This document shows, piece after piece, positions 1,438 to 34,222 of a DNA stretch of 38,959 bases. Below the pieces are notes generated by a model, which ran no database searches, was not told where the DNA came from, and saw only the letters and a list, made by a program, of their open reading frames with translations. Within the stretch, counting starts at the first letter, position 1, and each line of letters starts with the position of its first letter. Origin of the DNA: Octopus bimaculoides (Eukaryota); assembly GCF_001194135.2 (NCBI RefSeq), contig NC_068989.1, positions 15,176,653 through 15,215,611 of the forward strand. Direction: 5' to 3'. A program made the translations under genes and the position numbers.

Positions 1438-2159
1438 TGTGGGACTGAACTTGTAGCCAATATACTTGGGGAGTGAACTTCTTAACCACACAGCCACACA
1501 TGCAGCAAAGAGTGCAAAATCTTAGCTGAATGAAAACAAAACAACTTTTTCTTGGAAAATAAATGTAAAATTGTGAAAAAATCTTAAAAATAAATACAGT
1601 TTTTGGTTTTTTTAAGACAAAATCCTTTTCAAAACATAACATGTTATGATATAAAAGGTAATCTGGAGGGAATCTTCATAGACTTCTGCAAATAAGCATA
1701 AAGCTTAAAGGTTTAGGGCAAGAGGAATTGGAATTATGAGATTCAAGCTTCTTTTAATGACGTTTTGAAGTGAAATGATAACAATCCAACCTGACCTGGA
1801 TTTTGCTCTGTTAGAATATATTCGATGCGACAGGGCTTGAAAATATATCCTGGCGTCTATTTGTTTTTTTTTTTTTTTGTTCTGATCACATACATTGAAA
1901 TTATGTCACATTTTTACAACAAAGATCTGTTTCAATAAATTATGTTTCAATTCTTCGAACACAATATCAAATTCATCAGAATCAACTGTACTTTGGAATT
2001 GTCCTTTGCAAACTGCTCGCTTATTATTCCACTTATACAGTCCTACTTAAGCCAGTTGTAATCATTTTTGTTTGCTTGTTCTTGTAATGACTTTAAAACC
2101 CAGTCTTTATCACATGAATCATTTGAAGTTTGAATTAAAAACAATGTTTGTAATCTGTA

Positions 2160-3391: not shown

Positions 3392-3481
3392 TTTTTTACT
3401 AGGAGGTGTTCCAGGAATGACATCATCTTCACTATCATCATTGTTTTGTTTAGAGACGTGGAGATTAGGCTTGGGAATGAA
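3392..3481 (-). CDS. RAD9: RAD9 exon 12 (FIPKPNLHVSKQNNDDSEDDVIPGTPPSKK)
   Basis: VIPGTPPSKK matches human RAD9A TVPGTPPPKK. ttccag acceptor and gtaag donor; 90 nt, phase 0-0. The terminal exon lies downstream and was not resolved. Confidence 0.9.
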
Positions 3482-4207: not shown

Positions 4208-4445
4208 TTGAACAGCTATAATTGGACTGCTAGATTCTTCTTGCGATTCATGTTCAGAAGCTTTTTTATGAGAGTTAACCTTTTGCTTGCTGCTTGGTGA
4301 ACTTTCTGTGGGTGCTTGGTGAGCATAACGTGAAATATTGGGCGTGCTTACATCACCAGGTTCATTTACTGTAAACTCATCCCATTCCACAAAGATGGAA
4401 TCATCATTGAAAGAATCATCTGCATCCATCTGACAGGAGGTAGGC
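4208..4445 (-). CDS. RAD9: RAD9 exon 11, tail ((M)PTSCQMDADDSFNDDSIFVEW...HESQEESSSPIIAVQ)
   Basis: The tttattcttaattag acceptor gives the correct phase 2; gtaagg donor; 238 nt open. Acidic DDSFNDDS resembles human DDFANDDI. Confidence 0.82.
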
Positions 4446-5562: not shown

Positions 5563-5646
5563 ATATTATTTGCAGCTTCTCTGTCAGGTCCTTTGTTTTT
5601 CCCTGATGATGTTTTAGATGAATGTGCAGAAAGTTTAGACTGTTTG
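5563..5646 (-). CDS. RAD9: RAD9 exon 10, tail ((G)KQSKLSAHSSKTSSGKNKGPDREAANN+AT)
   Basis: Strong acceptor (tttctttgtcttcttcag) and gtaagt donor; 84 nt, phase 2-2, keeps frame between exons 9 and 11. No homology support. Confidence 0.8.
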
Positions 5647-6487: not shown

Positions 6488-6619
6488 CCTTTTGTGTGAT
6501 TAGCTTTCTTGCTATTTGATAAAGCTTGACTACATGGATTATCTTCAGTCTCATCACGTGTAGCTAACACAAAATTTGCTTCAAACAGTCTCTCACTCTG
6601 AATTGAGTATATAATTGGC
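6488..6619 (-). CDS. RAD9: RAD9 exon 9 ((K)PIIYSIQSERLFEANFVLATRDETEDNPCSQALSNSKKANHTK+GG)
   Basis: FVLAT motif that ends the PCNA-like ring. Poly-T plus cag acceptor; gtaag donor; 132 nt. Confidence 0.93.
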
Positions 6620-8395
6620 CTGAAAAAAAAAAAAGAAAAAAAAAAAAANNNNNNNNNNAAAAAAAAAAAAAAAAAAAAAAAAAAAGGAAAACAAAAAATG
6701 AAACAAAAAACAAAAGAGACTTGTTAGGAGTTAATATTTTTAAATAGCATTTAGAGTCAAAATGTAAGCTGGTTGCAGTTTTGAAGAAGGAAAACAAAGC
6801 ATCTCTTGTTGAATGTTGTTTTATGTAGAATCCACAACACAAAAGGTTTTTGTGGACTCAATACTGCCCAACCTACTTTTGTTTTTCATAACTATGGAAG
6901 GTGTAGGCATGGCTTAGGTGTAAGCAAGATTGTGTGGTTAAGAAGACCACTTCCTAACCATATGGTTTCAGGTTCAGTCCCACTGTATGACATTTTAAGC
7001 AAGTATTTCTTACTATAGACCTGAGCCAATTAAAGCCTTAAGAGTAGATTTGGTAGACAGAAACTGAAAGAAGCCTATTGTTTATGTGTATGTGTGTGTG
7101 TGTGTGTGAGAGAGAGAGTATGTTTATATCTATCTCTTTGTCTTAGCATCACATAACAGTTGTAAATGGATGTCATTGTCATTCATTTCCAATATTCTGC
7201 AAAAACATGTCTGGCCATGGGGAAATATTACTTTGCTAGGAAACAGGAGGGGAATCTGGCTATAGAAAAACTGCCTCAATACACTCTGTCTGACCCATGC
7301 TATCATGGAAAAGCAGATGTTAAAAATGATGATGATGGCAATGTTAGATGCTTCTCTAATTCTAACATTTCATCAAATGAGATCCTCATTAGTTTGTTAA
7401 ATTTATCTTTTTTACAAAGCTCTCCCGCCACCACCACTATCACTGTTGTCTTCTTTCTTGAATAAAGCACACAGTTCTGCTTGCTTCAATTTGTTTGAAT
7501 GACTCAAAACAGATTCTACTCCCTATTTCATGGTCCAGCGGTTAAATGGTAGGAAGGGTATTCTCATTAACCACCATCATTTAATGCCTGTTTTCCATGT
7601 TAACATGGGTTGGACAGTTCAACAGGAGCTGGCGAGCCAGAGAATTATGTTATGCTTCAATATTTCTACAGCTGGATGCCTTTCCTAACACCACCTTCCA
7701 ACAAACTTTACAAAGTGTACTGGGTGCTTTTTATGTGGTATGGCACCAGTGAGGTCTCTAAATGACTCATAAGATATGACCCCCCTCAAATAAGTGGGTG
7801 AACTGCTCCTAGAAAAAGCACAATATCCAAGTAAGCAACAACAAAACAATGCAAAACAGTAAAATAAAACTTTCTAAAATGAGCTTTTTGCTGAAATGGC
7901 TTTGATTCCATAAAAATTAACTCAGTTTCTTTTATATGCCTATTGGTAATGCACTGAATTCAGTCAGAGGATATACAAGAGTGTATGATGATTAAATGTA
8001 GCGTCTCTATTAAAGATGAGGTTACTAACTTACAAAATTCATAATGTGTTTTTCACACCTACAGGCTTGTCCTTCAAGTGCTGGTGCCACTTAAAAAGCA
8101 AGTACTGGTGCTATGTAAACACACTTGTGCTGGCGGCATATAAGAAGCACCCAGCACATTCTGTTAAGTGGTTGGTGTTAGGAAGGGCATCCAGCCGTAG
8201 AAACAATGCCACAACAGACAATTGGAGTCTGGACAGCTCCCTGCTAGCCAGCTGCATGTCAAGCCGTCCAACCCATGCCAGCATAGAAAGAGGACACTAA
8301 ACGATGATGATGATGACACATCCACCTGTTTTTCTCTCTGACAAAACAAAAAAAATCAGGGATTTTATAATATATTTTCATTATTCCAACAGGAC

Positions 8396-8709: not shown

Positions 8710-8774
8710 TTGCCATAGGTATCAAAGTAGAGCTTGACAGGAAGACTGGTTGCCTCAGCAAAAAGTAGGATAGC
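8710..8774 (-). CDS. RAD9: RAD9 exon 8 (AILLFAEATSLPVKLYFDTYG+AA)
   Basis: Aligns to human GLLSFAESANLNLSIHFDAPG. Long pyrimidine tract plus tag acceptor; gtatg donor; 65 nt. Confidence 0.93.
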
Positions 8775-10088: not shown

Positions 10089-10195
10089 GCGAAGTTCCTT
10101 AAGACAGAATGTAATATTCGTATTGTTAGCAATCTTGCATTCATCAAACTCATCTGGAAGAAGGTTTAACTCTGTCCGCATATGCTTTTTGGGAT
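10089..10195 (-). CDS. RAD9: RAD9 exon 7 ((D)PKKHMRTELNLLPDEFDECKIANNTNITFCLKELR)
   Basis: ITFCLKE(L/F)R signature. ttcctcag acceptor and gtaag donor; 107 nt. Confidence 0.96.
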
Positions 10196-12258: not shown

Positions 12259-12362
12259 CTGGTTCATCCACATGATTCTTGAAAGAAATTTTTTCCTTTG
12301 ATACTTCCAGAGTTACTTCTTCTTGGTTGTTCTGGAAATTTAGTACAGCATCACATAAAAGC
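12259..12362 (-). CDS. RAD9: RAD9 exon 6 ((R)LLCDAVLNFQNNQEEVTLEVSKEKISFKNHVDEP+G)
   Basis: Aligns to human RVLGEAVLPF..EVTL. ttcag acceptor and gtaag donor; 104 nt. Confidence 0.93.
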
Positions 12363-12523: not shown

Positions 12524-12642
12524 GTTTACGGCCATATCACGTTGAGAGCACCGGTTCTCGTCTGATCACTGAAGTTAAGCAACGTTGAGCCTAGTGAGTA
12601 CTTAGGATGGGTGACTGCTTGGGAAACCTAGGTGCTGTAAGT
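12524..12642 (+). pseudogene. Processed 5S rRNA pseudogene
   Basis: Full-length 5S-like sequence (gtttacggccatatcacgttg...gatgggtgactgcttgggaaacctaggtgctgtaag). Followed by an A-run rather than an oligo-T terminator; TpG at positions that are CpG in typical metazoan 5S; single copy inside a SINE. Confidence 0.9.
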
Positions 12643-12660
12643 GTAAAAAAAAACCCAAAA

Positions 12661-12898
12661 CCTAAGGCGATGAGCTGGTAGAAACGTTAGCATGCCGGGC
12701 GAAATGCTTAACAGTATTTCGTCTGCCGCTACGTTCTGGGTTCGAATTCCGCCGAGGTCGACTTTGCCTTTCATCCTTTCGGGGTCGATTAAATAAGTAC
12801 TAGTTACGCACTGGGGTCGATATAATCGACTTAACCTGTTTGTCTGTCCTTGTTTGTCCCCTCTGTGTGTAGCCCCTTGTGGGCAGTAAAGAAATAAG
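12661..12898 (+). mobile_element. tRNA-headed SINE (AAGGCGGCGAGCTGGCAGAA family), tail type A
   Basis: Close match to copies at about 5148-5380 (+) and 12931-13167 (-). GTTCGAATTCC B-box. Confidence 0.85.
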
Positions 12899-12930
12899 AA
12901 GCTTGCTTCCCATCCACTGCATGGCACCTT

Positions 12931-13167
12931 ATTTCTTTATTGCCCACAAGGGGCTAAACATAGATGGGACAAACAAGGACAGACAAAGGGATTAAGTCGA
13001 TTACATCGACCCCAGTGTGTAACTGGTACTTGATTTATTGATCCCGAAAGGATGAAAGGCAAAGTCGACCCCGGTGAAATTTGAACTCAGAACGTAAAGA
13101 CAGACGAAATACCGCTAAGCATTTCGCCCGGCGTGCTAACGATTCTGCTAGCTCGCCGCCTTTTAAA
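12931..13167 (-). mobile_element. Same SINE family, inverted copy with a 15-bp TSD
   Basis: ACTGCATGGCACCTT at 12916-12930 and 13168-13182. Confidence 0.88.
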
Positions 13168-15185: not shown

Positions 15186-15285
15186 CTTGATGAAGCTATC
15201 AAGAGATTCTCACAGTCGTCTACATCAAATACTGCCTGTAACATTTCACATTCGATAAATGCTAGATTGTGTGTTTTGATAATTC
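15186..15285 (-). CDS. RAD9: RAD9 exon 5 ((G)IIKTHNLAFIECEMLQAVFDVDDCENLLIASS+AG)
   Basis: Aligns to human [21 protein letters not shown]. cttgtag acceptor and gtgag donor; 100 nt, phases fit. Confidence 0.95.
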
Positions 15286-16868: not shown

Positions 16869-16983
16869 CATGTTTGCAGTGCAATTTGAACATCAATCTG
16901 TCATCTTTAACATTAAGCATAATCTTACACTTCTGTACAGTTTTCTCTATAGTTGCAACGGATTTGAAAATGTTCAGACAAGA
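16869..16983 (-). CDS. RAD9: RAD9 exon 4 (SCLNIFKSVATIEKTVQKCKIMLNVKDDRLMFKLHCKH+G)
   Basis: Aligns to human SFLSVFRSLAMLEKTVEKCCISL...LHCKFG. Long pyrimidine tract plus cag acceptor; gtatg donor; 115 nt. Confidence 0.95.
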
Positions 16984-18003: not shown

Positions 18004-18159
18004 CTTTATTGATATTTTACAGCGAAGTGGTTCGTCTTTGGCACTGTTTAAGTTATCACCGTTGCTATGATAGTCACACAAATACTGGATAAAGAATTTG
18101 GGATGAAACTGAAAACTAGCAAAGGCTGATCGAGAAGAATTGACTGTCTTTAAATACAA
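18004..18159 (-). CDS. RAD9: RAD9 exon 3 (LYLKTVNSSRSAFASFQFHPKFFIQY...LRCKISIK)
   Basis: Carries the TVNSSRSA and LRCKI motifs. tttcag acceptor and gtgag donor; 156 nt, phase 0-0. Confidence 0.96.
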
Positions 18160-20597: not shown

Positions 20598-21551
20598 AAT
20601 ATGCTTCAACACACAAAATCACATAAAAAAATCTTGCAAACCAAATCCAAAAACGAATTATATAAAACTGTTCCATATCAACGTTAATTTCAGTATCTTG
20701 TACCAAATCTCACACTTTAATATAATTTCTTATCTAAGCTGAAGATTTTTAATAGCTTAATCAGGTGGTGGTGGTGGTGGGAAACAGCGCACATGACCTT
20801 TTCCATTGCTTCTGAGACTGGTTAGCAAGTAAGTGGAAGCTAATTTTCAGACCAAGGACCTGGTCCTAATGCCTGCAGCTAAAAATACCAAGAAGTGATG
20901 TTAAATCATGCCTCAGATTAAGTCTACATTTATAGGTGTATAAGGGAGCTAACAGAATTGTTAGCACGCCGGACATCCGTACGTTTTGAGTTCAAATTCC
21001 GCCGAGGTCGATAAAATAAGTACCAGTTGAGCATTGGGTATGAATGTAAAAACTATAATCCTCTGCCAAGCCATTGTGGCTGAGTAGGCTCATCCAATCA
21101 GTGTGATCTCAAACTCAAACTCACGGCCTCCACATCAGACTGCGGTTAGTGGAGAGAACATGCAGAGGCCTTCGTTCTGCAGTGGATTGAACACAGGCAA
21201 TCCAATACAATCCAAGACCCATGTAATATAGGTCGTTTTTTCTCAAAGAGTCTTAACGACATGAGTGAACAAATTTTCTAGTAGTTACGTTTAATGCTGG
21301 TTTTCGAAAGTTGGTCAAAATTCTACAGGAATGAAAATAAACGGTTGATGTGTGTGTAAACCTACGTAGTACACATGTCAAATTTACTTATTTCTCAGTA
21401 GATTGAAAAAAAAAAACGATGAAAACCTTAATCGACTATCGACTTTTATTGGGGTTTCATCATCATTCGACCACTTTCAGTGAAACAAGTAGCTAATCCA
21501 TTTACACACATACATACAAATAAGCCTAGGCAGTCGTATTATTGAGAATTT

Positions 21552-21699
21552 GGTAATTTTTCAGATTAACACCAGCACGATTTTCACTAGGGTGTTAGGG
21601 TTAGGGTTACGACTAGGGACGGAATTCCCTAACCCAAACCCTAACTGTAACCCTAAAACCCTAGTGAAGATCGTGCGGGTGTTAATCTGAAAAATTACC
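21552..21699. mobile_element. 148-bp palindromic MITE with an 8-bp TSD and internal TTAGGG-like repeats
   Basis: Arms GGTAATTTTTCAGATTAACACC... and ...GGTGTTAATCTGAAAAATTACC. GAGAATTT at 21544-21551 and 21700-21707. Confidence 0.85.
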
Positions 21700-22043
21700 G
21701 AGAATTTATGTATTATATCTTGTTAGTCTCAGGCCAGCTCTGATTAAGCATACATATGATATAAGGCATTCCAGAGTGCTTATTCCGTTCTGTTGTATGT
21801 TTAATACTACGTTGTCATATACCTCTACAACCATCATTTTGATTGTAAACGATCGAGTGATTTAAAGGGGTTTTACGCAGCTACTTCTAGCATGTCAATC
21901 AAATGATTAAAATGTCAGAGTTACTTCCCTTGTTGTGTTTCGACGAGAAACTTTTAATAGAAACGTTAAAGAAAAAACTTCTATATATAAAGACGATTTT
22001 TATAAGATAACAATGTTATTTTATGATATAGCTCGATACTAAC

Positions 22044-22114
22044 CCCATCATCCAGTTGTTCAATGTATAATTCTTCTCCAATCTTTGCCAAAGAATGAAT
22101 GGCACGCGCAAAAA
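22044..22114 (-). CDS. RAD9: RAD9 exon 2 ((V)FARAIHSLAKIGEELYIEQLDDG)
   Basis: ttttcag acceptor and gttagt donor; 71 nt. Aligns to human [24 protein letters not shown]. Confidence 0.93.
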
Positions 22115-22362
22115 CTGAAAATTTAAGATGACTACAATTAATATTTTTATTTTTTTTAAAATCACATTAATGCGGTGGTGATTTTATTAAAATACTTTAT
22201 TTTGTTACTTTTCATAGTTTATACATAAACAATGTTTTAATCAGAATTATAATTCTAAACGAAACTTAAAAAACACTCCTTAACATTTTAAATAACAGCA
22301 TTGGTTACTAATATATATTATATCTATTTAATAGATTTATATCCGAGTATTTATATCGTTAC

Positions 22363-22402
22363 CTTTTATATTATTACCAGGAATGGTACAAGACATGTTC
22401 AT
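22363..22402 (-). CDS. RAD9: RAD9 checkpoint clamp subunit, coding exon 1 (MNMSCTIPGNNIK+G; a second ATG at 22396 is also possible)
   Basis: Resembles the human RAD9A N-terminus MKCLVTGGNVK. Ends at G|gtaacg (phase 1), matching exon 2. Confidence 0.85.
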
Positions 22403-22670
22403 GTTGGTTTCATTCAACTGTACATGAAATTCCGCGCTTCCTTTCGTTTCACGTCAAAATTTCCTTCGACGTTATAAACATTTCCAATTGGTTAGATTCC
22501 AGAATGCCAGCCAATCATAATCGTTGTATCTAAGCAACTTGTTGGTAAGTCAGGTGTTGGTTTCTATCCGTCAGGTGCTGGTGGACTTTTTAAAGGAAAC
22601 CTAATACGTTTGTTTATTTATCCATCAATTCCGATTCCATTTAGCTCCGTTGGTTTAATTTATTTCTAAG
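22403..22670. promoter_or_regulatory. Putative bidirectional promoter plus both 5'UTRs between RAD9 and VPS29
   Basis: 268 nt between divergent ATGs. Several CpGs; palindromic CCAATTGG (22484-22491); AGCCAATCA NF-Y-like box (22509-22517); CRE-like TGACGTGAA on the - strand (22448-22456). Confidence 0.75.
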
Positions 22671-22673
22671 ATG
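22671..22673 (+). CDS. VPS29: VPS29 coding exon 1 (ATG only, end of the 5'UTR exon)
   Basis: ATG|gtaagta is a strong donor in the CpG-containing region. Exon 2 begins at Leu2 in phase 0, and the total length becomes 182 aa, as in human VPS29. Confidence 0.82.
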
Positions 22674-24721
22674 GTAAGTAGTTTTTGTCTTCTTTATTTA
22701 AACGATGTTTTGTCATAAATATTGATTAAATGGAATGTAGTCTTGGGTTGTTTAGATTGTTTGGTGGGCGTGTGTACTTAGACCTCTACTTTGTATCATT
22801 TTTATCCCGTAGTTTGACCCCCTCTTGTATATTCGGTATATTCCGTTGTAAATACGCAAAGCTAAATATTACAAAGCCCTTAATTCTTGCTCATCTGATT
22901 AAATAATTTTGTTAAGTCTTTTCCGGCAGTATTGCTTGGTTTGAGTCATGTAGTTACGATTCAGAAGACGATAAACAAATGCCAAGAAAACGAACAGAAT
23001 AAAATGAGCTACTTGGTTCCAAAGGGTTCTGGTATTAAATAGAGCAATAGAATATACTTAAAATCATCTCGATATGATCAAGATATCCTATTTTTTATTA
23101 TAAAGTTAGTCTTCCTCTTATTGTCATGTTTCTTTTTATACACTAATTCAGTCTGTGCGAGTTTATGCTGTTAAGCCAGGAAATGTGATCAACAATTAGT
23201 TTTTAGGGTATATTCTAGGGAAAACTTACAGATATTAATTTGTTTCTAAAAATTTCTTAATTCAGAATTTTGTCGGGCATTTTAAAGACAAATTGCACTT
23301 TGTACTTACATTCTTAAACCGAAAAACATGAAAATATATAACAAAACTCCGAAAGATTTTCATTTAAGCACATACAAACTAATTTCCAAATATTTAGCAA
23401 AAACATGTCCAACTATAAAATATTAGTTGTGTAAGTTATTGCTTTATCACTTTCCTATTTAGCAAAAGTCAAACAATAATTGATAAGTGCAATCTAAATT
23501 GAATAAAGTATTAAAGTTATCCTCCTCAATCTTTACTATTTGACCTGCCCTATTTATCGTTCTAATGTCTAATATTGGTGAAAAGTTCACAAATATTATA
23601 ATTTCTGTTTCGACTGTAAGGAGATATCATAATCCCTAACAAGTTCCTATTAAAAATCTGCAGTGCTAATTATTCAAATTTGAGATCGTTAAGTTTGATA
23701 TAATGTCTTAGCATAATATTTGGTAACATTCTCTTAATGATTTTAATGAAATCATGTTGTCTCACAACACCGGAGGTGTATGATGGCAGGCTGGACTCGT
23801 TGGGCATTTCATACTTAGAATACACAAGAAATTATCGTAAATATTGTTATCTTTCATGATCATTGAAAGATGTAGACACATCATCATCATTATCATTTTA
23901 ACAACCATATTTCCATGTTGATATGGGTTGGATAGGTGTGCAACATAGAATCCTCTTAATCCTGTACCATTTTGCTTGCAGGTCATAACGTTTTCAGATC
24001 TAACCAAATACACTTCTCCCATGGTCTTACTCTACTGCACATAGTATTTTCTCAATCATTAATTGTCTGCACCAATGCATTATATGTCCTACACTTACTG
24101 TCTGATACCATTTAATATCCAGCTGCCCTCAACTCGTTTGTGCTGTGCTTTTTATGCAAATTAACATTGCACAATCAATTTATCATACTCATCTAATTTC
24201 TCTGTATGTACTCTATAGATTTTCCACAGAAATTGCTTATGATTCGTTACCAACCAGCATCATACATTTTACAAATGCTTCATATAGTTTTTCCTTAAAT
24301 GCCTTCTATCCTTTCTCTTCCTACATCTACACTACACCCACCTTCAGCGCTTAGATATCACTTAGATAACAGAAACTGCTACAACAATCTTCTACTTGAA
24401 TGATGCTCCTCCTGCTAATCATTGAGGAAGAGACTCTATGTAGTTACTTGTTCTACTAGAAATAACAGCCAAATCTTACTAAAACCATGTCTTACTTTCT
24501 AAAATAAGGAAAAAAGAAAGAGAATAATGTAATCTTAGACATACATAAAATAACAGGATGATCATGACTTGAATGCTTTCAGTTATAAGTCTACTTGATC
24601 AGGGTTGACTTGTGGCTAAACATCTAAAATAGCACATCTGAAATATTTATTCTTCCTCTGTACTGCTGCACCTTTTGTGTACTTGTTACATGTGCCTAAA
24701 CACACAGTATTAAGTTCTTAT

Positions 24722-24893
24722 GTGGAGGCGCAATGGCCCAGTGGTTAGGGTAGCGGACTCGCAGTCATAGGATCACGGTTTCGATTCCCAGACCGGGTGT
24801 TGTGTGTGTTTGTTGAGCGAAAACACCTAAAGCTCCACGAGGCTCCGGCAGGGGATGGTGGCGAACCCTGCTGTACGGAGTGCCAACAACAAC
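24722..24893 (+). mobile_element. Internally deleted copy of the (AAC)n-tailed SINE
   Basis: Head joined directly to the tail at ctgtac|ggagtgcc, with AC microhomology. Confidence 0.8.
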
Positions 24894-25728
24894 AGCCAGA
24901 GGGACCATGGCCTAGTGATTAGGGTGTTGCACTCACAATTGCATTATTGTGGTTTCAATTCCTGGGCCAGGTTATGTATTGTGTTCTTGAGCAAATCATT
25001 TCATTTCATGTTGCTCTGCAATCTCTTTTGACATCTGATGCGTAGCAAACTGTGCACCTGTTTAAGCAATATTGATTTGGTGAATGGAGTGACCTAAAGT
25101 ATAGCACAAACATTTGATCACTATAAATAAATCACCTGTGGGGTTGTTCAGCAAGGTTTTGCGGAACCCTCATCTGTGGTCTATGACAAGAAAGCTCACG
25201 GTCAGAAGAGAAAGAGCAGCCAGCACCCATGACCATCTTTGGGTTCTTTGAAACTAACAGAAAAAAGGGAAGTAGCTATACTTTGGTCAGAGATCTGGAC
25301 TGAAGGCTTGCAACAAAGTGGACTCTGTTAAAGGCACCCAAAAATCAGGGGTTGGTATTAAACTGGCTGATGGAGACAAAGTCCTAAACTAAAAGGAATG
25401 TTTGTTTTCTGGAGAATATTGTGGTGGTGTTGTGGCAAAGGCTTTAAAAACAGTGTAAGCTAATTATAGATCAGATTCACTACATTTTGATTTGTGGTTG
25501 AGAATCATTTTATTTGATTTGTATCGCCAATAAATCTTGTACCTTGGGTAAGTGTTTTCTATTATAGTCCCAACCTGACCAATTCCTTGTGAGGGAATTT
25601 GAAAGATGGAAACTATAGAAAGCCTATTGCATGTGTGTGTGTGTGTGTGTGTGTAAGTTAATATTTTACACTTGTCATTGGTTGAATAAAATAGTGGTGA
25701 TATTGACATTAGTTCAGTTACTGTGCTT

Positions 25729-25972
25729 TAGTGGAGGTGTGTGGCTTTGTGGTTAGGGTGTTGCACTCCTGACCGTAAGATTGTGGTTTCAATTCCTGGA
25801 CTGATGGACACATTGTGTTCTTGAGCAAAACACTTCATTTCATTCCACTCAGCTGGCAAAAATGAGTAACCCTGTGATGGACCAGTGCCCTGTCCAGGTG
25901 GGGAATATATGCTCCATGAAAACCAGTAAACCGTCCCTTGTGAGCTGGTGTGACTCGAGAAGGAGTACTTTT
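25729..25972 (+). mobile_element. Degenerate tRNA SINE with a V-SINE-like central motif
   Basis: tRNA-like head. accctgtgatggaccagtgccctgtccagg resembles, from memory, the CCTGCGATGGACTGG..CCTGTCCAGG motif of V-SINE-type elements. Confidence 0.5.
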
Positions 25973-26030
25973 TTTTAATCACTGTACTTTTGAAGACTTC
26001 TGGAATTTAAAAAAAAAAATTATTTGAAAT

Positions 26031-26430
26031 AGGTGCAGGAGTGGCTGTGTGGTTGGTAGCTTGCTTACCAACCACATGGTTCTGGGTTCAGTCCCCCTGA
26101 GTGGCACGTTGGGCAAGTGTCTTGTATTATAACCTCAGGCCGACCAAAGCCTTGTGAGTAGATTTGGTAGACGGAAACTGAAAGAAGCCCATCGTATATA
26201 TGTATATATATATGTGTGTGTGTATATGTTTGTGTGTCTGTGTTTGTCCCCCCAACATTGCCTGACAACCGATGCTGGTGTGTTTACGTCCCCGTAACTT
26301 AGCGGTTTGGCAAAAGATACTGATAGAATAAGTACTAGGCTTACAAAGAATAAGTCCTGGGGTCGATTTGCTTGACTAAAAGCAGTGCTTGAGCATGGCC
26401 ACAGTCAAATGACTGAAACAAGTAAAAGAA
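26031..26430 (+). mobile_element. Abundant ~400-bp SINE with an internal (TA/TG)n microsatellite (AGGAGTGGCTGTGTGG family)
   Basis: Full-length copy ending gactgaaacaagtaaaaga; many other copies in this window. Confidence 0.85.
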
Positions 26431-26705
26431 TGGGTAAGTGTTGGCAACAGGAAGAGTATCTTTTCATAAAATACTGCCTCAAATAATGCTCTGTCCAAAT
26501 CCATGCTATCAGGGAAAAATGGATGTTGAATGAATGAAGACAGTATGAGAGATGCAACATTCTATTTTCCCTCCCCTAAACATATTTTTCATACCCAGGT
26601 AAAAATTAGTAATGTTTCTCTTTATCTTAATATGTATTCACCATATGTTGAAATACTCTTCTGTATATGTAATTACATTTGCTTGTTTGTCTTTTTCTTT
26701 TGCAG

Positions 26706-26897
26706 TTGGTGCTAGTTCTTGGTGATTTGCACATTCCACATCGCTGCAATAGCATGCCTAATAGATTTAAGAAACTCTTGGTACCTGGCAAGATTCAGCA
26801 TATTTTATGTACAGGTAATCTATGTACAAAAGAATCATTTGATTACCTGAAGACATTAGCTAGTGATGTTCATGTCGTGCGTGGAGACTTTGATGAA
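26706..26897 (+). CDS. VPS29: VPS29 exon 2 ([43 protein letters not shown]...VRGDFDE)
   Basis: Near-identical to human VPS29. ttttgcag acceptor and gtaagt donor; 192 nt. Confidence 0.98.
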
Positions 26898-27014
26898 GTA
26901 AGTAACACATTAAACTAAATCTGAAGTACTGAGATAAACTCTTGTGTAATTGACGCTTATAATATTAACTGGCATATGAGATGTATTCTTGCATAAGATA
27001 CACTCTCTCTCCCT

Positions 27015-27355
27015 TTCTCTCTTTTACTTGTTTCAGTCATTTGACTGCGGCAATGCTGGAGCACCGCCTTTAGTCGAGCAAATCGACCCCAGGACTTATT
27101 CTTTGGAAGCCTAGTACTTATTCTGTCGGTCTCTTTTGCCGAAGAACCGCTAAGTTACGGGGCCGTAAACACACCACCATCGGTTCTCAAGAGATGCTGG
27201 GGGGACAAACTCAGACACACAAACATATATACACACATTCATATATATATATACATATATACGACAGGCTTCTTTCAGTTTCTTTCTACCAAATCCACTC
27301 ACAAGGCTTTGGTTGGCCTGAGGCTATAGTAGAAGACACTTGCCCAAGGTGCCAA
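27015..27355 (-). mobile_element. Inverted, 5'-truncated copy of the microsatellite-bearing SINE
   Basis: Reverse complement of most of 26031-26430. Confidence 0.85.
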
Positions 27356-28157
27356 CAAATATATTTTGTGGAAAATATAAGGACACAGATTGTGTCGTAT
27401 AGCCAGCTGGAGATGTCTCTTGGGCCTAAATTACAGCCACATTCGTCCTAAACCAGGACTGCCATGTTATGTTGGCAAACAATCTTTACTACAAAGTACT
27501 GTTGCTGAATATCTCTCGTTGTGAGATTTAAAAATAGTAATTTTCTAATGGGAAATTATGATGACGAAAATCATGTGAGGACAAAGTTTTAACCTGTTGA
27601 GTATTTTGGAGTTGTATTATTTGCATTACTTACATTTTTGGATAGATCAGAATTATAAAAGCGAGGTACAGGCATGGCTGTGTGGTTAAAAAGTTCAAAT
27701 TGCAATCATGTGGTTTAAGGAAGTCCCATCCATGTGGCATCTTGGGCAAGTGTCTTTTACTATAGTCCTGGGCTGTTCAATGCCTTATGAGTGAATATGG
27801 TAGATGGAAACTATGTGAAAGCCTGTTAGGTATTATATATGCATACATATACATGCACATGCACACACACACACACACACACTTTCAGACAGTCTTTATA
27901 TTTGCATGTGTATGTGTTTTTATGTTTGTTTTCCCACTGCTGGTGGTTGATCAGTTTGTTGTTTGTCTCCCTAAAAAAAAATTAGTTCTGAGGTCGATTT
28001 GACTGTTTAAACATCATTGAAGCTGGTGCCCCAGCATGGCCACAGTTCAAATGACTGAAACAAATAGTAAAGAGTTATTTACCACAGATTCTCTTCCCTT
28101 TATTTCTTTTGTTATTTTTATTGTAACTTAACCAATGTTTTTATTTTTCTCTTGCAG

Positions 28158-28393
28158 ACTCTTAATTACCCTGAGCAAAAAGTGGTGACTGTTGGCCAGT
28201 TTCGGATTGGTTTGTGTCATGGACATCAAGTAGTACCATGGGGGGAAACAGAAAGCTTAGCTATGGTACAACGGCAATTAGATGTAGACATTCTCATTTC
28301 AGGCCACACCCATATATTTGATGCTTTTGAACATGAAAACAAATTCTACATTAATCCAGGATCGGCCACTGGAGCTTATAATGCCTTGGAAAA
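28158..28393 (+). CDS. VPS29: VPS29 exon 3 ([24 protein letters not shown]...ISGHTH...[14 protein letters not shown]+AA)
   Basis: GHTH and NPGS calcineurin-like phosphoesterase-fold motifs. cttgcag acceptor and gtatag donor; 236 nt. Confidence 0.98.
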
Positions 28394-28646
28394 GTATAGT
28401 TTCTTTTATTTGTATTTTTGAAGCTTCTGTGTAATTTGTCAAATCTAGTTATTTGTTTATCTCAAGAGGGTCATTATTCCAATAACAAACACACACCTTC
28501 CCTTCTAAATTTCAGAATTTGTGCCTATACTAGGAAGAATTATTAGTCAATTTGTTAACTTTTAGACAATTAACTAATAAATTGTTTGTCGATTAGTTAA
28601 TTGGTTAAATGTTAAATTTACTAATAATAATAATAATAATAATAAT

Positions 28647-29142
28647 TTTGTCTTGGTATAAAAGATAGGCTACAGCAAATATTCTGCTCAATACCACAGA
28701 TTTGCTTGTCAGTTGTTTGAACTTAACCAGTTGAGCATGTCCCTTGGTGGCTGACGATATGTGCATCTCTGATCATGAGCAGAAGTAGTGGGGGAGCATC
28801 ATAGCCATGTGTTGAGAGGAATTCTTTCGGGTTTGAATAATTCACCTTTGGAAACATGGGTGTTTTACTCAACATCCTTAAACGAACCTTATTCAGGGAC
28901 CTTTTGAGCGGGATAGGCTACTCGACCTGAAGAAAATTCTAACTGGGCCTCACCTGCGAGGTCATGCGCTGTTTATCTTGATATGAGATCACTTTGTCGT
29001 GCATATATGGTTGTGATGCATGTGCCTAGTGTACCCTTATCAGATGGGTAGTCATGATGGGTATAATAGGTTTTGTATATTTTACCCCAGTGCCACTTTG
29101 AGGGCATGCAATGCTCTCTCACTCAATAATAATAATAATAAT
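28647..29142 (+). mobile_element. ~480-bp unclassified retroposon-like segment bracketed by (TAA)n arrays
   Basis: More GC-rich than its surroundings; (TAA)n at about 28622-28646 and 29125-29142. Confidence 0.4.
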
Positions 29143-29422
29143 CATAATAAAAGTGAAATAGAAACTGTGCATGTGTTTATTATTGGCATAATGACCCTCC
29201 CAAGATACACCAGAATTTGTTTTGACTTATGAACTCACATTGAGAATCTTACAAACCTAATTCAAAACCAAAAGTGTTTATTTTATAATTACATGATAGG
29301 TACAGGCATGGCTCTATAATTTATTTTGCTTCTCAACTAAGCTGTTTTGGGTTCATTCCCATTGTGTAACACCTTATCCCTAGATCAACCAAAGCCTTGT
29401 GAGTGGATTGTTCAATGTATTT

Positions 29423-30155
29423 TTTCCATGCTAGCATGGGTTGGACGATTTGACTGAGGACTGGCGAACCGGATGGCTGCACCAGGCTCCAATCTGATCT
29501 GGCAGAGTTTCTACAGCTGGATGCTCTTCCTAACGCCAACCACTCCGAGAGTGTAGTGGGTGATTTTACGTGCCACCGGCACGAGGGCCAGTCACGCTGT
29601 ACTGGCAACGGCCACGCTCAAAATGGTGTTTTTTACGTGCCACCTGCATGGGAGCCAGTCCAGCGGCACTGGCAACGACCTTGCTTGGATGATTTTCTAA
29701 GATGCCACTGGCACAAGTGCCAGTAAGGCGACACTGGTAACGATCATGCTCAAATGGTGTGCCACTAGCATGGAAGCCAGACAGCTGCTCTGGCAATGAT
29801 CACGCTCGGACAGTGCTGTTAGTGCTCCACTGGCACAAGTACCAGTCATCGAATATGGTTCAATTACGATTTCGCTTGCCCCAACAGGTCTTTACAAGCA
29901 AGATTTAGTGTCCAATGAAGGAGAGGTTGGCATGGGTGCCAGTCGTCAAATTTGGTTCGATTTCGATTTCAAATTCAAATTCCCTTGCCTCAACAGGTCT
30001 TTGCAAGTAGAGTTTAGTGTCCAATAAAGTAAAGATACGAATAAGTGAGCTGGCTGCACTTCTGGCAGAGGCCACAGATTATGCTCTCACTTGGCTTGCC
30101 GGGTCTTCTCATGTACTGCATATTTCCAAAGGTTCCGGTCACTAGTCAATGCCTT
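29423..30155 (-). mobile_element. Long RTE LINE 3'UTR copy
   Basis: Reverse complement of 5700-6258, extending toward the ORF2 stop region seen at 10600-10800. Confidence 0.75.
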
Positions 30156-31163
30156 ATACAAATTCACATAAAGAATCTTGCAAACCAAATACAAAAACGA
30201 AATTTGGTTTATGTTGTGAGCACTAATGTTGAATTTCTGGCAATTTCTTTTCCGAGAATTAACAAGTGACTTTGTAGTTATATCATTGGCACTGAATCAT
30301 AATAGTGTTAACTTCTCTCCGGTTGATTTTGCAAAGACCTTTTCTTTTTAGAAGTGTGTATATGAGTGTGAATACTATGAGCTGATGGTGGAGGTTATTC
30401 CCTGGCAAAACTTGATTAAAGAAGATATGAAAGGTAGTGAACCCCAATCTGAGGAAGTTGAGCCTCCCAGAAGTGATGATGCAGGGTTAACCAAAATGGC
30501 AGAATGTTATATTACAGACCTGTTCAACCCATATTTGTATGGAGAATGGACATTTGAATAATGATGATAATGTGGTCTTATAGTCATCAGATAAAATTGT
30601 GACAATGCTTATATCATCATCATTTAATATCTGCTTTTCCATGCTTGCATGGGTTGAATGGACTTTGTTGAGGCAGATTTTCTACAGCCGGATGCTCTTC
30701 CTGTCACCAACTCTCATCTGTTTCCAAGATATTTTCCCTCAGCTAGACATGCCTTTCACGGAAGACTGGAAACAAACAACTTCACTTGTATGATGATGAT
30801 GATGATGATGCTCATTTGTAACCGTCACATGCTGTCAAGGTACACACAATCCAGATACACATCACAGGCTTCTTTCAGTTTCTGTCTACCAAATCCACTT
30901 ACAAGGCCGAGGCTGTAGTAGAAGACTCTTGCTCGAGATACCATGCTGTGGGAGTGACCCCCAAGACCACATTGTTGGGAAACAAACTTCTCAACCACAC
31001 AGCCATGCTTATATACACCTAGGTTATTTAGTTATTTGCCTGTATCTAATTCACAAGCATTTATATGAAACATGTCATATCTAATCATATCCATTATAAA
31101 TATTTTATATTCTGAACTTAACAATTCTATCATCATTATATTTTTTTTCTCCTTTCTTTGCAG

Positions 31164-31281
31164 CAATGTCATTCCTTCATTTGTGATTTTGGACATCCAG
31201 CAGTCAACTGTAGTTGCCTATGTCTATAAGCTGATAAACGACGATGTTAAAGTGGAGAGGATAGAATATAAGAAATCATAG
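31164..31281 (+). CDS. VPS29: VPS29 exon 4 ((N)[38 protein letters not shown])
   Basis: ctttgcag acceptor in phase 2; ends at TAG. Sum 3+192+236+118 = 549 nt = 182 aa plus stop. Confidence 0.98.
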
Positions 31282-34007: not shown

Positions 34008-34222
34008 ATCTTCAATCTACGGCGCCTCCAAGACCCAATAGAGACTGATCTGAGATCTTCTCTTCGCAGACAATGCTGCTATCGTCGCCCAAACAGAGCG
34101 AGCTCTGCAGCGAATCATGTCCTGCTTTGTGGACGCCTCGCGGCTCTTTGGCCTGGAGGTCAGCCTCAAGAAGACGGAGTTACTTCACCAGCCTGCACCC
34201 CAGGAGGTATACCGCTCACCCC
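34008..34222 (+). mobile_element. Isolated reverse-transcriptase fragment of an RTE/BovB-like LINE
   Basis: FNLRRLQ...DLLFADNAAIVAQTERALQRIMSCFVDASRLFGLEVSLKKTELLHQPAP, the RT FADD motif region, here FADN. GC- and CpG-rich island. Confidence 0.8.

What the first reader, a model, noticed from the sequence alone, without database searches (positions are those of the whole stretch)
22044..22680. RAD9 and VPS29 head-to-head (268 nt between ATGs), the same pairing as human RAD9B-VPS29
Seen in the sequence: the RAD9 ATG (- strand, 22402/22396) and the VPS29 ATG (+ strand, 22671) diverge from a short CpG-containing spacer with CCAAT boxes, while introns on both sides are packed with retroposons. Established knowledge: human VPS29 and RAD9B are divergent neighbours at 12q24. 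Inference: the pairing predates the protostome-deuterostome split and was kept by a shared promoter, even in a lineage known for heavy genome rearrangement. It would link a DNA-damage clamp to retromer trafficking, with RAD9B rather than RAD9A retaining the ancestral neighbour.
Basis: partly seen in the sequence, partly recalled or inferred. Interest (0 to 1): 0.75.

Follow-up and report, generated by a model that had tools for sequence, protein, structure and literature searches.

The report
Ancient RAD9–VPS29 head-to-head gene pair
In this octopus sequence the DNA-damage checkpoint gene RAD9 and the retromer gene VPS29 start 268 bases apart on opposite strands, an arrangement also found in oyster, lamp shell, annelid, crayfish, acorn worm, amphioxus, sturgeon and human, so it is a real but fairly ordinary example of an ancient gene pair that probably shares a two-way promoter.

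Summary
The window is Octopus bimaculoides. RAD9 (- strand, 13 coding exons, 22402 down to 1644) and VPS29 (+ strand, 4 coding exons, 22671 to 31281) diverge from a 268-nt spacer.

The spacer lies in the only CpG-undepleted, repeat-free stretch of the 39-kb window. It holds the window's only pair of CCAAT boxes 24-27 bp apart.

I found the same head-to-head RAD9-VPS29 pairing in 7 of 8 other bilaterian lineages checked: oyster, Lingula, Owenia, crayfish, Ptychodera, amphioxus and sturgeon RAD9B. The starfish was the exception. Published tables list the human pair. Catfish RAD9A and two cnidarians lack it. PPTC7 lies on the other side of RAD9 in oyster, Lingula, amphioxus, sturgeon and mammals.

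The pairing therefore dates at least to the bilaterian ancestor, and RAD9B kept the ancestral neighbours.

A shared NF-Y-type bidirectional promoter is the most likely reason it persisted. Double CCAAT boxes recur at 24-25 bp in octopus, Lingula and amphioxus. This is inferred, not shown, and the spacer has grown to 2-8 kb in oyster and crayfish.

Nothing supports a functional link between checkpoint and retromer.

This is a new, well-documented member of a known class, conserved ancestral divergent gene pairs. Interest is moderate to low.

The parts
22363..22402 (-). RAD9 coding exon 1 (ATG at 22402; in-frame ATG at 22396 aligns with Met1 of orthologues); GT donor after 22363
22044..22114 (-). 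RAD9 coding exon 2
18004..18159 (-). RAD9 coding exon 3
16869..16983 (-). RAD9 coding exon 4
15186..15285 (-). RAD9 coding exon 5
12259..12362 (-). RAD9 coding exon 6
10089..10195 (-). RAD9 coding exon 7
8710..8774 (-). RAD9 coding exon 8
6488..6619 (-). RAD9 coding exon 9
5563..5646 (-). RAD9 coding exon 10
4208..4445 (-). RAD9 coding exon 11
3392..3481 (-). RAD9 coding exon 12
1644..1685 (-). RAD9 last coding exon as annotated in XP_014777887.1, stop included. It lacks the conserved FRSLFFG tail, so it may be an artefact of the 432-N gap at 2160-2591.
22403..22670 (.). 268-nt spacer between the two start codons; presumed shared bidirectional promoter plus both 5' UTRs
22484..22491 (.). Palindromic CCAATTGG: a CCAAT box readable on both strands, 82-89 nt from the RAD9 ATG
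22511..22515 (+). CCAAT box (AGCCAATCA, good NF-Y flanks), 24/27 bp from the first box and 160 nt upstream of the VPS29 ATG. Together the two form the only 24-27 bp double CCAAT module in the window.
21001..23000 (.). CpG-undepleted island (1-kb bins with o/e 0.89 and 1.17, against 0.42 window-wide), despite low G+C
21707..24721 (.). Zone around the promoter that is free of intra-window dispersed repeats
22671..22673 (+). VPS29 coding exon 1: the ATG alone, followed by GTAAGT. The same exon structure occurs in oyster, Lingula, Owenia, crayfish, Ptychodera, amphioxus and sturgeon.
26706..26897 (+). VPS29 coding exon 2
28158..28393 (+). VPS29 coding exon 3
31164..31281 (+). VPS29 coding exon 4 with TAG stop

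Best explanation
RAD9 and VPS29 are an ancestral bilaterian divergent gene pair, part of a PPTC7-RAD9-VPS29 block.

In octopus they are most likely transcribed in opposite directions from one compact, unmethylated, TATA-poor promoter of the NF-Y (double CCAAT) type lying in the 268-nt spacer. VPS29's first coding exon is just the ATG, and RAD9's first coding exon is 34-40 nt. Both core promoters and both 5' UTRs must therefore fit into, or overlap within, this spacer.

Any rearrangement breakpoint there would damage at least one of two broadly needed genes. The adjacency has therefore been kept by purifying selection for more than 500 million years, even through the genome reshuffling of coleoid cephalopods.

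After the vertebrate genome duplications the RAD9B copy kept VPS29 and PPTC7, and RAD9A lost them.

What is shown: gene identities, gene structure, and the adjacency and orientation in eight bilaterian lineages plus human. What is inferred: that the promoter is shared, that NF-Y binds it, and that this is what maintains the linkage.
For: Gene models and identity.

Head-to-head RAD9-VPS29, with the distance between start codons:
- octopus 268 nt
- Lingula 308 nt
- amphioxus 238 nt
- Ptychodera 264 nt
- Owenia 165 nt
- sturgeon RAD9B 778 nt
- oyster 2213 nt
- crayfish 7944 nt
. The neighbours are VPS29 by tblastn, at 59-94% identity per aligned segment.

Human pair: listed as divergent with overlapping or close TSSs. 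The mammalian gene order is PPTC7-RAD9B-VPS29.

PPTC7: it lies downstream of RAD9 in oyster, Lingula, amphioxus and sturgeon. It was confirmed as PPTC7.

RAD9A: the catfish locus lacks both neighbours.

Conserved exon 1 structures: ATG|GT for VPS29 and ATGAARTG...AAAG|GT for RAD9.

Promoter features:
- CpG o/e is 1.18 against 0.42 window-wide, and the zone is repeat-free.
- There are three CCAAT/ATTGG boxes where 0.57-0.87 are expected.
- It is the only box pair 24-27 bp apart in the window. A pair 24-25 bp apart is also present in Lingula and amphioxus. Shuffle P is 0.003-0.006 for each, with the range taken from human NF-Y ChIP data in PMC4889920.
- A divergent ATTGG...CCAAT pair occurs in 4 of 6 compact spacers.

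Precedents: an NF-Y-driven bidirectional promoter (PMC1802594), and the class of conserved 5'-5' microsyntenic pairs explained by coregulation (PMC3514665).
Against: - No TSS, expression or binding data were available, so sharing of the promoter is inferred.
- The pair persists in oyster and crayfish with spacers of 2.2 and 7.9 kb. The sturgeon spacer is 778 nt without a close CCAAT pair. Owenia has no CCAAT box at all and carries two CCGGAAGT-type ETS sites instead. A compact double-CCAAT promoter is therefore not required for the linkage.
- The divergent-pair pattern was defined after seeing the data.
- Acanthaster shows no VPS29 within the 109-kb locus, so the pair can be lost.
- The 2010 survey listed this pair for tetrapods only, although its species set included Daphnia, Drosophila, Nematostella and Trichoplax.
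Confidence: 0.65

Rival explanations
1. Neutral inertia. The adjacency is an unbroken remnant of the ancestral gene order with no selective constraint. Two small neighbouring genes separated by a short spacer offer a tiny target for breakpoints, and slowly rearranging genomes keep many such pairs by chance.
For: All positive invertebrates except octopus and crayfish belong to lineages regarded as slow to rearrange. Adjacency survives spacer expansion to 2.2 and 7.9 kb. It was lost in Acanthaster.
Against: The pair, its orientation and both first-exon structures are kept in eight bilaterian lineages, including a coleoid cephalopod whose genome is heavily reorganised (PMC9023564). The flanking genes beyond the trio differ in every species. 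CCAAT modules recur in the spacers beyond chance.
Confidence: 0.2
2. Adaptive co-regulation. RAD9 and VPS29 are kept together because the cell needs them expressed together, implying a functional link between the 9-1-1 checkpoint clamp and retromer or retriever trafficking.
For: Only the conserved linkage itself, plus the double-CCAAT architecture. In human cells that architecture is typical of proliferation and cell-cycle promoters (PMC4889920).
Against: No known pathway connects the two, and none was found in the literature. Only 5 papers in the library mention both genes, all as locus lists, and none mentions them together with synteny. Vertebrates run the main checkpoint function through RAD9A, which is unlinked to VPS29. 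The two cnidarians and the starfish do without the linkage.
Confidence: 0.08
3. Interdigitated long-range regulation (a regulatory-block type of constraint). Enhancers or other cis-elements for one gene of the PPTC7-RAD9-VPS29 block lie inside the introns of a neighbour, so the whole block must stay intact.
For: The block has three genes in oyster, Lingula, amphioxus, sturgeon and mammals. That is more than a two-gene promoter model needs.
Against: All three are housekeeping-type genes, not developmental regulators. PPTC7 is absent from the 10-kb flank in Owenia, Ptychodera and crayfish, and its orientation differs in amphioxus. The octopus introns are filled with dispersed repeats and CpG-depleted sequence, with no sign of conserved elements.
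Confidence: 0.06
4. Convergence. The pairing arose independently in molluscs and vertebrates.
For: None found.
Against: The same pair is present in seven further bilaterian lineages. They share the orientation, the ATG-only VPS29 first exon, the RAD9 first-exon boundary and often the same third gene.
Confidence: 0.01

Closest known systems
Conserved ancestral microsyntenic pairs (CAMPs) of metazoans, 5'-5' coregulated subclass (Irimia et al. 2012, PMC3514665), e.g. HSPE1-HSPD1
   Same: Two unrelated genes, adjacent and divergently oriented in both protostomes and deuterostomes. The spacer is under 1 kb in most lineages, and a shared promoter is the proposed constraint.
   Different: This pair is not named in the main text of that paper, and its supplementary list was not available here. 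Co-expression was not tested. The pair was absent in the two cnidarians checked, whereas HSPE1-HSPD1 reaches unicellular relatives and fungi.
Human RAD9B-VPS29 divergently paired genes (PMC3815023 suppl.; PMC12672016 Table S1; PMC2871058 Table S5)
   Same: Orthologous genes, same orientation, close or overlapping 5' ends, and PPTC7 on the far side of RAD9B.
   Different: The earlier lists record conservation among tetrapods only (chicken, human, mouse, Xenopus), or do not place it among pairs shared with yeast, fly or worm. Here the pair is traced to molluscs, brachiopods, annelids, arthropods, hemichordates and amphioxus. Octopus RAD9 is the single pre-duplication gene, not RAD9B.
MRPS12-SARS2 bidirectional promoter driven by an array of CCAAT boxes bound by NF-Y (Zanotto et al., PMC1802594)
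   Same: A spacer of under 300 bp between two oppositely transcribed housekeeping genes, multiple CCAAT boxes in both orientations, and no strong TATA dependence.
   Different: NF-Y binding and bidirectional activity were shown experimentally there. Here they are inferred from sequence only.
Double CCAAT modules of human NF-Y-bound promoters with 24-27, 36 and 43 bp spacing (PMC4889920)
   Same: Box distances are 24/27 bp (octopus), 24 and 45 bp (Lingula), 25 and 34 bp (amphioxus) and 34 bp (Ptychodera). These fall on or next to the preferred classes.
   Different: The preferred distances were measured in human cell lines. Whether invertebrate NF-Y has the same spacing preference is assumed.

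Membership tests
RAD9 (9-1-1 checkpoint clamp subunit) | Full-length match to the Rad9 family profile and to solved RAD9 structures | tested here: met
   Pfam PF04139 E 3.3e-75, profile 1-253/253. Human RAD9A chains E 4e-71. 100% identical to XP_014777887.1.
VPS29 (retromer/retriever subunit) | End-to-end similarity to VPS29, a ~182-aa metallophosphoesterase-fold protein | tested here: met
   Pfam Metallophos_2 E 2e-25. Mammalian VPS29 structures E 1e-108 over residues 1-182.
Conserved ancestral microsyntenic pair (CAMP) | Non-paralogous genes adjacent in several phyla on both sides of the protostome-deuterostome split | tested here: met
   Adjacent in Mollusca (2 classes), Brachiopoda, Annelida, Arthropoda, Hemichordata, Cephalochordata and Vertebrata.
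Conserved ancestral microsyntenic pair (CAMP) | Conserved 5'-5' orientation | tested here: met
   VPS29 is on the opposite strand, upstream of RAD9, in every positive locus.
Conserved ancestral microsyntenic pair (CAMP) | Correlated expression of the two genes | not testable with these tools
   No expression data were available.
Bidirectional promoter | Opposite-strand transcription start sites less than 1 kb apart | tested here: inconclusive
   The start codons are 268 nt apart and each lies in a first coding exon. The TSSs are therefore under 1 kb apart unless there are unannotated upstream non-coding exons. The TSSs themselves were not mapped.
Bidirectional promoter | CpG-island-like, unmethylated sequence context | tested here: met
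   CpG o/e is 1.18 in the spacer and 0.89-1.17 over 21001-23000, against 0.42 for the window. G+C itself is low (37%), so this is not a vertebrate-style CpG island.
Bidirectional promoter | Activity in both directions from one DNA fragment | not testable with these tools
   Needs a dual-reporter assay.
NF-Y double-CCAAT promoter module | Two CCAAT pentamers at a preferred distance (24-27 bp) | tested here: met
   Boxes at 22484/22487 and 22511. This is the only such pair in the window. Shuffle P 0.003. Range taken from PMC4889920.
NF-Y double-CCAAT promoter module | NF-Y occupancy | not testable with these tools
   Needs ChIP or EMSA.

The most novel reading that the evidence does not exclude
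The spacer may be a promoter whose grammar, and not just its position, has been conserved since the bilaterian ancestor. That grammar is a double CCAAT (NF-Y) module at helical-phase spacing, serving an ATG-only VPS29 first exon on one side and a 34-nt RAD9 first exon on the other. It sits within a three-gene PPTC7-RAD9-VPS29 block that survived both the coleoid genome reshuffling and the vertebrate genome duplications. If so, it would be a compact, experimentally tractable model for how a shared core promoter freezes gene order over more than 500 million years.
Probability: 0.35. Interest if true: 0.5.

Novelty: new member of a known kind. Interest (0 to 1): 0.35.

Why it matters
This is a clean, fully resolved case of deep conservation of gene order. 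The same two unrelated genes share the same orientation, the same first-exon boundaries and, in several phyla, the same promoter box arrangement, from octopus to human.

It shows which vertebrate RAD9 paralogue kept the ancestral locus. It adds PPTC7 as a third member of the block.

It also offers a 165-310-nt promoter that could be swapped between phyla to test whether shared core promoters are what preserve such pairs.

It does not reveal a new kind of element. It gives no reason to connect DNA-damage signalling with endosomal sorting.

Tried and rejected
- **False exon 8.** A weak tblastn hit at 6800-6729 first looked like RAD9 exon 8. It has no usable donor site and was dropped in favour of 8774-8710, which reproduces the RefSeq protein exactly.
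- **Missing RAD9 tail.** A search for the conserved FRSLFFG C-terminal exon below 3500 found nothing. It may lie in the N gap at 2160-2591.
- **PPTC7 in the window.** No hit. It must lie beyond the left end.
- **Priapulus RAD9.** The look-up found no record, so Ecdysozoa rests on the crayfish alone.
- **Acanthaster.** The RAD9 model spans 97 kb on a draft scaffold. No VPS29 was found by annotation or tblastn. I count this as absent or unresolved.
- **Naming the PP2C_2 neighbour through PDB.** This returned only a plant PP2C. It was resolved with a homology search instead.
- **Repeat classification.** ARAGORN found no tRNA-like SINE heads, and ORF inspection found no long RT ORFs. "Retroposons" therefore remains a plausible label, not a demonstrated one.
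- **Literature.** The supplement of Irimia et al. 2012 is not held. The supplements of Schmidbaur et al. 2022 do not name the genes. I cannot exclude that the pair sits in an existing microsynteny list under gene identifiers.
- **Promoter/terminator scanner.** Not used, because it models bacterial sigma-70 promoters.
- **Other motifs.** E2F-like, CRE half-site, ETS, NRF1 and YY1 matches were noted but are not consistent across species. I make no claim from them.
Full report
**What is in the window**

The window is a draft-quality eukaryotic sequence with four N gaps. The RAD9 protein it encodes is 100% identical to XP_014777887.1 of Octopus bimaculoides.

Probing with recalled human sequences located exons of both genes. 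I then refined them by hand to splice sites.

VPS29 lies on the + strand with four coding exons, all with GT-AG introns:
- 22671-22673, which is the ATG alone, followed by GTAAGT
- 26706-26897
- 28158-28393
- 31164-31281

It encodes 182 aa. It matches Pfam Metallophos_2 (2e-25) and mammalian VPS29 structures over its whole length (1e-108).

RAD9 lies on the - strand with 13 coding exons from 22402 down to 1644. Their translation equals the RefSeq protein exactly. It covers the whole Pfam Rad9 profile (3.3e-75) and matches human RAD9A structures (4e-71).

The second in-frame ATG (22396) is the one that aligns with Met1 of other RAD9 proteins.

**The spacer is unusual within the window**

- Window-wide CpG observed/expected is 0.42, which is strong depletion. 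The only 1-kb bins at or above 0.89 are 21001-23000, and the spacer itself scores 1.18, in the top 2% of 268-nt windows.
- About 31% of the window consists of short dispersed repeats, with up to 14 copies inside the window. None lies between 21707 and 24721.
- The spacer holds three CCAAT/ATTGG pentamers (22484, 22487, 22511), where 0.57-0.87 are expected.
- These form the only box pair 24-27 bp apart in the whole 39 kb.

The label "retroposons" for the intronic repeats is plausible but was not demonstrated.

**Is the pairing ancestral?**

I used RAD9 orthologues from the homology searches to fetch genomic loci with 10-kb flanks and their gene calls. With RAD9 placed on the + strand, a 181-186-aa Metallophos_2 gene sits immediately upstream on the - strand in seven species. 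Distances are between start codons.

| Species | Group | ATG-to-ATG distance |
|---|---|---|
| Octopus bimaculoides (window) | cephalopod | 268 nt |
| Crassostrea virginica | bivalve | 2213 nt |
| Lingula anatina | brachiopod | 308 nt |
| Branchiostoma lanceolatum | cephalochordate | 238 nt |
| Owenia fusiformis | annelid | 165 nt |
| Acipenser ruthenus (RAD9B-type) | vertebrate | 778 nt |
| Procambarus clarkii | decapod | 7944 nt |
| Ptychodera flava | hemichordate | 264 nt |

- tblastn confirms that these neighbours are VPS29, at 59-94% identity per aligned segment. In crayfish only the ATG exon falls inside the locus, so the Pfam annotation of the gene call carries the identification there.
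- In every one of these species the VPS29 first coding exon is the bare ATG followed by a GT donor.
- In every one the RAD9 first coding exon is ATGAARTG...AAAG|GT.

Loci without the pairing:
- Catfish RAD9A, whose neighbours are a 635-aa gene and a RabGAP-TBC gene.
- The coral Oculina, where RAD9 is head-to-head with a different 680-aa gene.
- The hydrozoan Hydractinia, where RAD9 is intronless.
- The starfish Acanthaster, with a 97-kb RAD9 model on a draft scaffold and no VPS29 in 109 kb.

For human, published tables give RAD9B (+) with its TSS at chr12:110,501,655 and VPS29 (-) with its TSS at 110,502,111, that is, overlapping 5' ends (PMC12672016 Table S1). Older lists give 184-213 nt (PMC2871058 Table S5; PMC3815023).

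The chance that a given gene has one particular gene as its divergent neighbour is of the order of 1 in 10,000 per genome. Eight lineages with identical orientation and exon structure can only mean common descent. The pairing therefore dates at least to the last common ancestor of protostomes and deuterostomes. Whether it is older is open: both cnidarians checked were negative.

**A third gene**

Downstream of RAD9 lies a gene of about 300 aa with PP2C_2/SpoIIE domains in oyster, Lingula, amphioxus and sturgeon.

- Its exons are 63-66% identical to vertebrate "protein phosphatase PTC7 homolog".
- They match the octopus PPTC7 protein XP_014777889.1.
- Mammalian gene lists give the order PPTC7, RAD9B, VPS29, FAM216A (horse, PMC6353161; human, PMC13409549). 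Sturgeon also has a FAM216 gene beyond VPS29.
- PPTC7 is not in the octopus window. Its RefSeq accession is two away from that of RAD9, which hints that it lies just beyond the window's left end.

The sturgeon and catfish loci show that RAD9B, not RAD9A, kept the ancestral neighbours.

**How it probably works**

The two first coding exons are tiny, so both 5' UTRs and both core promoters must lie in or overlap the spacer. Its CpG retention marks it as the one unmethylated, promoter-like stretch of the locus.

CCAAT boxes recur across phyla:
- Box pairs 24 or 25 bp apart occur in octopus, Lingula and amphioxus. Each has a shuffle probability of 0.003-0.006.
- A 34-bp pair occurs in Ptychodera.
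- Human NF-Y-bound regions prefer distances of 24-27, 36 and 43 bp, and double CCAAT boxes are typical of proliferation-linked promoters (PMC4889920).
- A divergent ATTGG...CCAAT arrangement, with one box reading towards each gene, is present in 4 of 6 compact spacers. I defined that pattern after seeing the data.

An NF-Y-driven bidirectional promoter of just this kind has been dissected for MRPS12-SARS2 (PMC1802594). Coregulation through shared promoters is the standard explanation for conserved 5'-5' pairs (PMC3514665).

My best reading is therefore an ancestral shared NF-Y-type bidirectional promoter, where breakpoints are selected against.

The caveats are real:
- No TSS, expression or binding data were available.
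- Owenia uses ETS-type sites and has no CCAAT box.
- The pair survives with 2.2-kb and 7.9-kb spacers in oyster and crayfish.

Compactness is therefore not indispensable, and part of the persistence may be neutral.

**What is not supported**

Nothing suggests a functional tie between the 9-1-1 clamp and retromer.
- Only five papers in the library mention both genes, all as locus lists. None mentions them together with synteny.
- Vertebrates run the main checkpoint function through RAD9A, which is unlinked to VPS29.

**Novelty**

- The human pair is already catalogued as a divergent pair.
- It was recorded as conserved among tetrapods in 2010. That survey's species set lacked amphioxus, molluscs, annelids and echinoderms.
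- The general phenomenon is well described. Hundreds of bilaterian-age microsyntenic pairs are known, most of them 5'-5', and 275 metazoan blocks are retained in a squid.
- I found no text naming this pair as bilaterian-wide. The relevant supplementary lists were not all available.

It is best filed as a new, well-documented member of a known kind. The added details are the PPTC7 trio, the frozen first-exon structures and the recurring double CCAAT module.

Noticed in passing
window 12524-12643 (+): A full-length 5S rRNA match (Rfam RF00001, 95.6 bits, model 1-120/120) lies inside RAD9 intron 5. It is followed by an A-run rather than a T-run terminator, and then by a copy of a dispersed repeat family (12662-13162). 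It looks like a retroposed 5S copy or the head of a 5S-derived SINE rather than a working 5S gene.
   Followed up: partly
outside the window (left end); loci L001 19071-22605, L002 17865-25011, L003 20437-28720, L007 27575-32216: PPTC7 lies next to RAD9 on the side away from VPS29 in oyster, Lingula, amphioxus, sturgeon and mammals. Octopus PPTC7 (XP_014777889.1) has an accession two away from RAD9 (XP_014777887.1), so the trio is probably intact in octopus too.
   Followed up: partly
window 1644-1685 (-) and N gap 2160-2591: The annotated last RAD9 exon (KSMKIPSRLPFIS*) lacks the FRSLFFG-type tail present in the vertebrate RAD9 proteins inspected here. No such exon is found below 3500. The true terminal exon may be hidden in the 432-N gap.
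   Followed up: partly
window 6729-6800 (-): The peptide ALFSFFKTATSLHFDSK resembles RAD9 exon 8 (AILLFAEATSLPVKLYFDTYG) but has no usable donor site. It may be a decayed duplicate of exon 8, lying next to a long poly-T tract and a 10-N gap.
   Followed up: partly
window 34027-34191 (+): A reverse-transcriptase-like fragment lies downstream of VPS29. It is similar to a long retroelement ORF in the Acanthaster locus (L005 36749-38074).
   Followed up: no
L006 10001-11386 (Hydractinia symbiolongicarpus): RAD9 is a single intronless ORF of 461 aa next to an IQCJ-SCHIP1-like gene. This suggests intron loss or retroposition in this hydrozoan, along with loss of any ancestral neighbours.
   Followed up: no
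L004 6866-7089 (Owenia fusiformis): The end of one VPS29 exon (KFYINP[GV][10 protein letters not shown]) occurs three times in tandem, and the gene is split into two gene calls in the annotation. This may be a local exon duplication or an assembly artefact.
   Followed up: no
L009 4171-9740 (Oculina patagonica): In this coral RAD9 is also head-to-head with a close neighbour (261 nt), but the neighbour is a 680-aa gene without Pfam domains. RAD9 may tend to sit in bidirectional arrangements even where VPS29 is not the partner.
   Followed up: no
window 22430-22437 and 22450-22457: An E2F-like TTCCGCGC and a CRE-like TGACGTGA (on the RAD9-sense strand) lie between the CCAAT boxes and the RAD9 start codon. 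They are not consistently present in the other species' spacers.
   Followed up: partly
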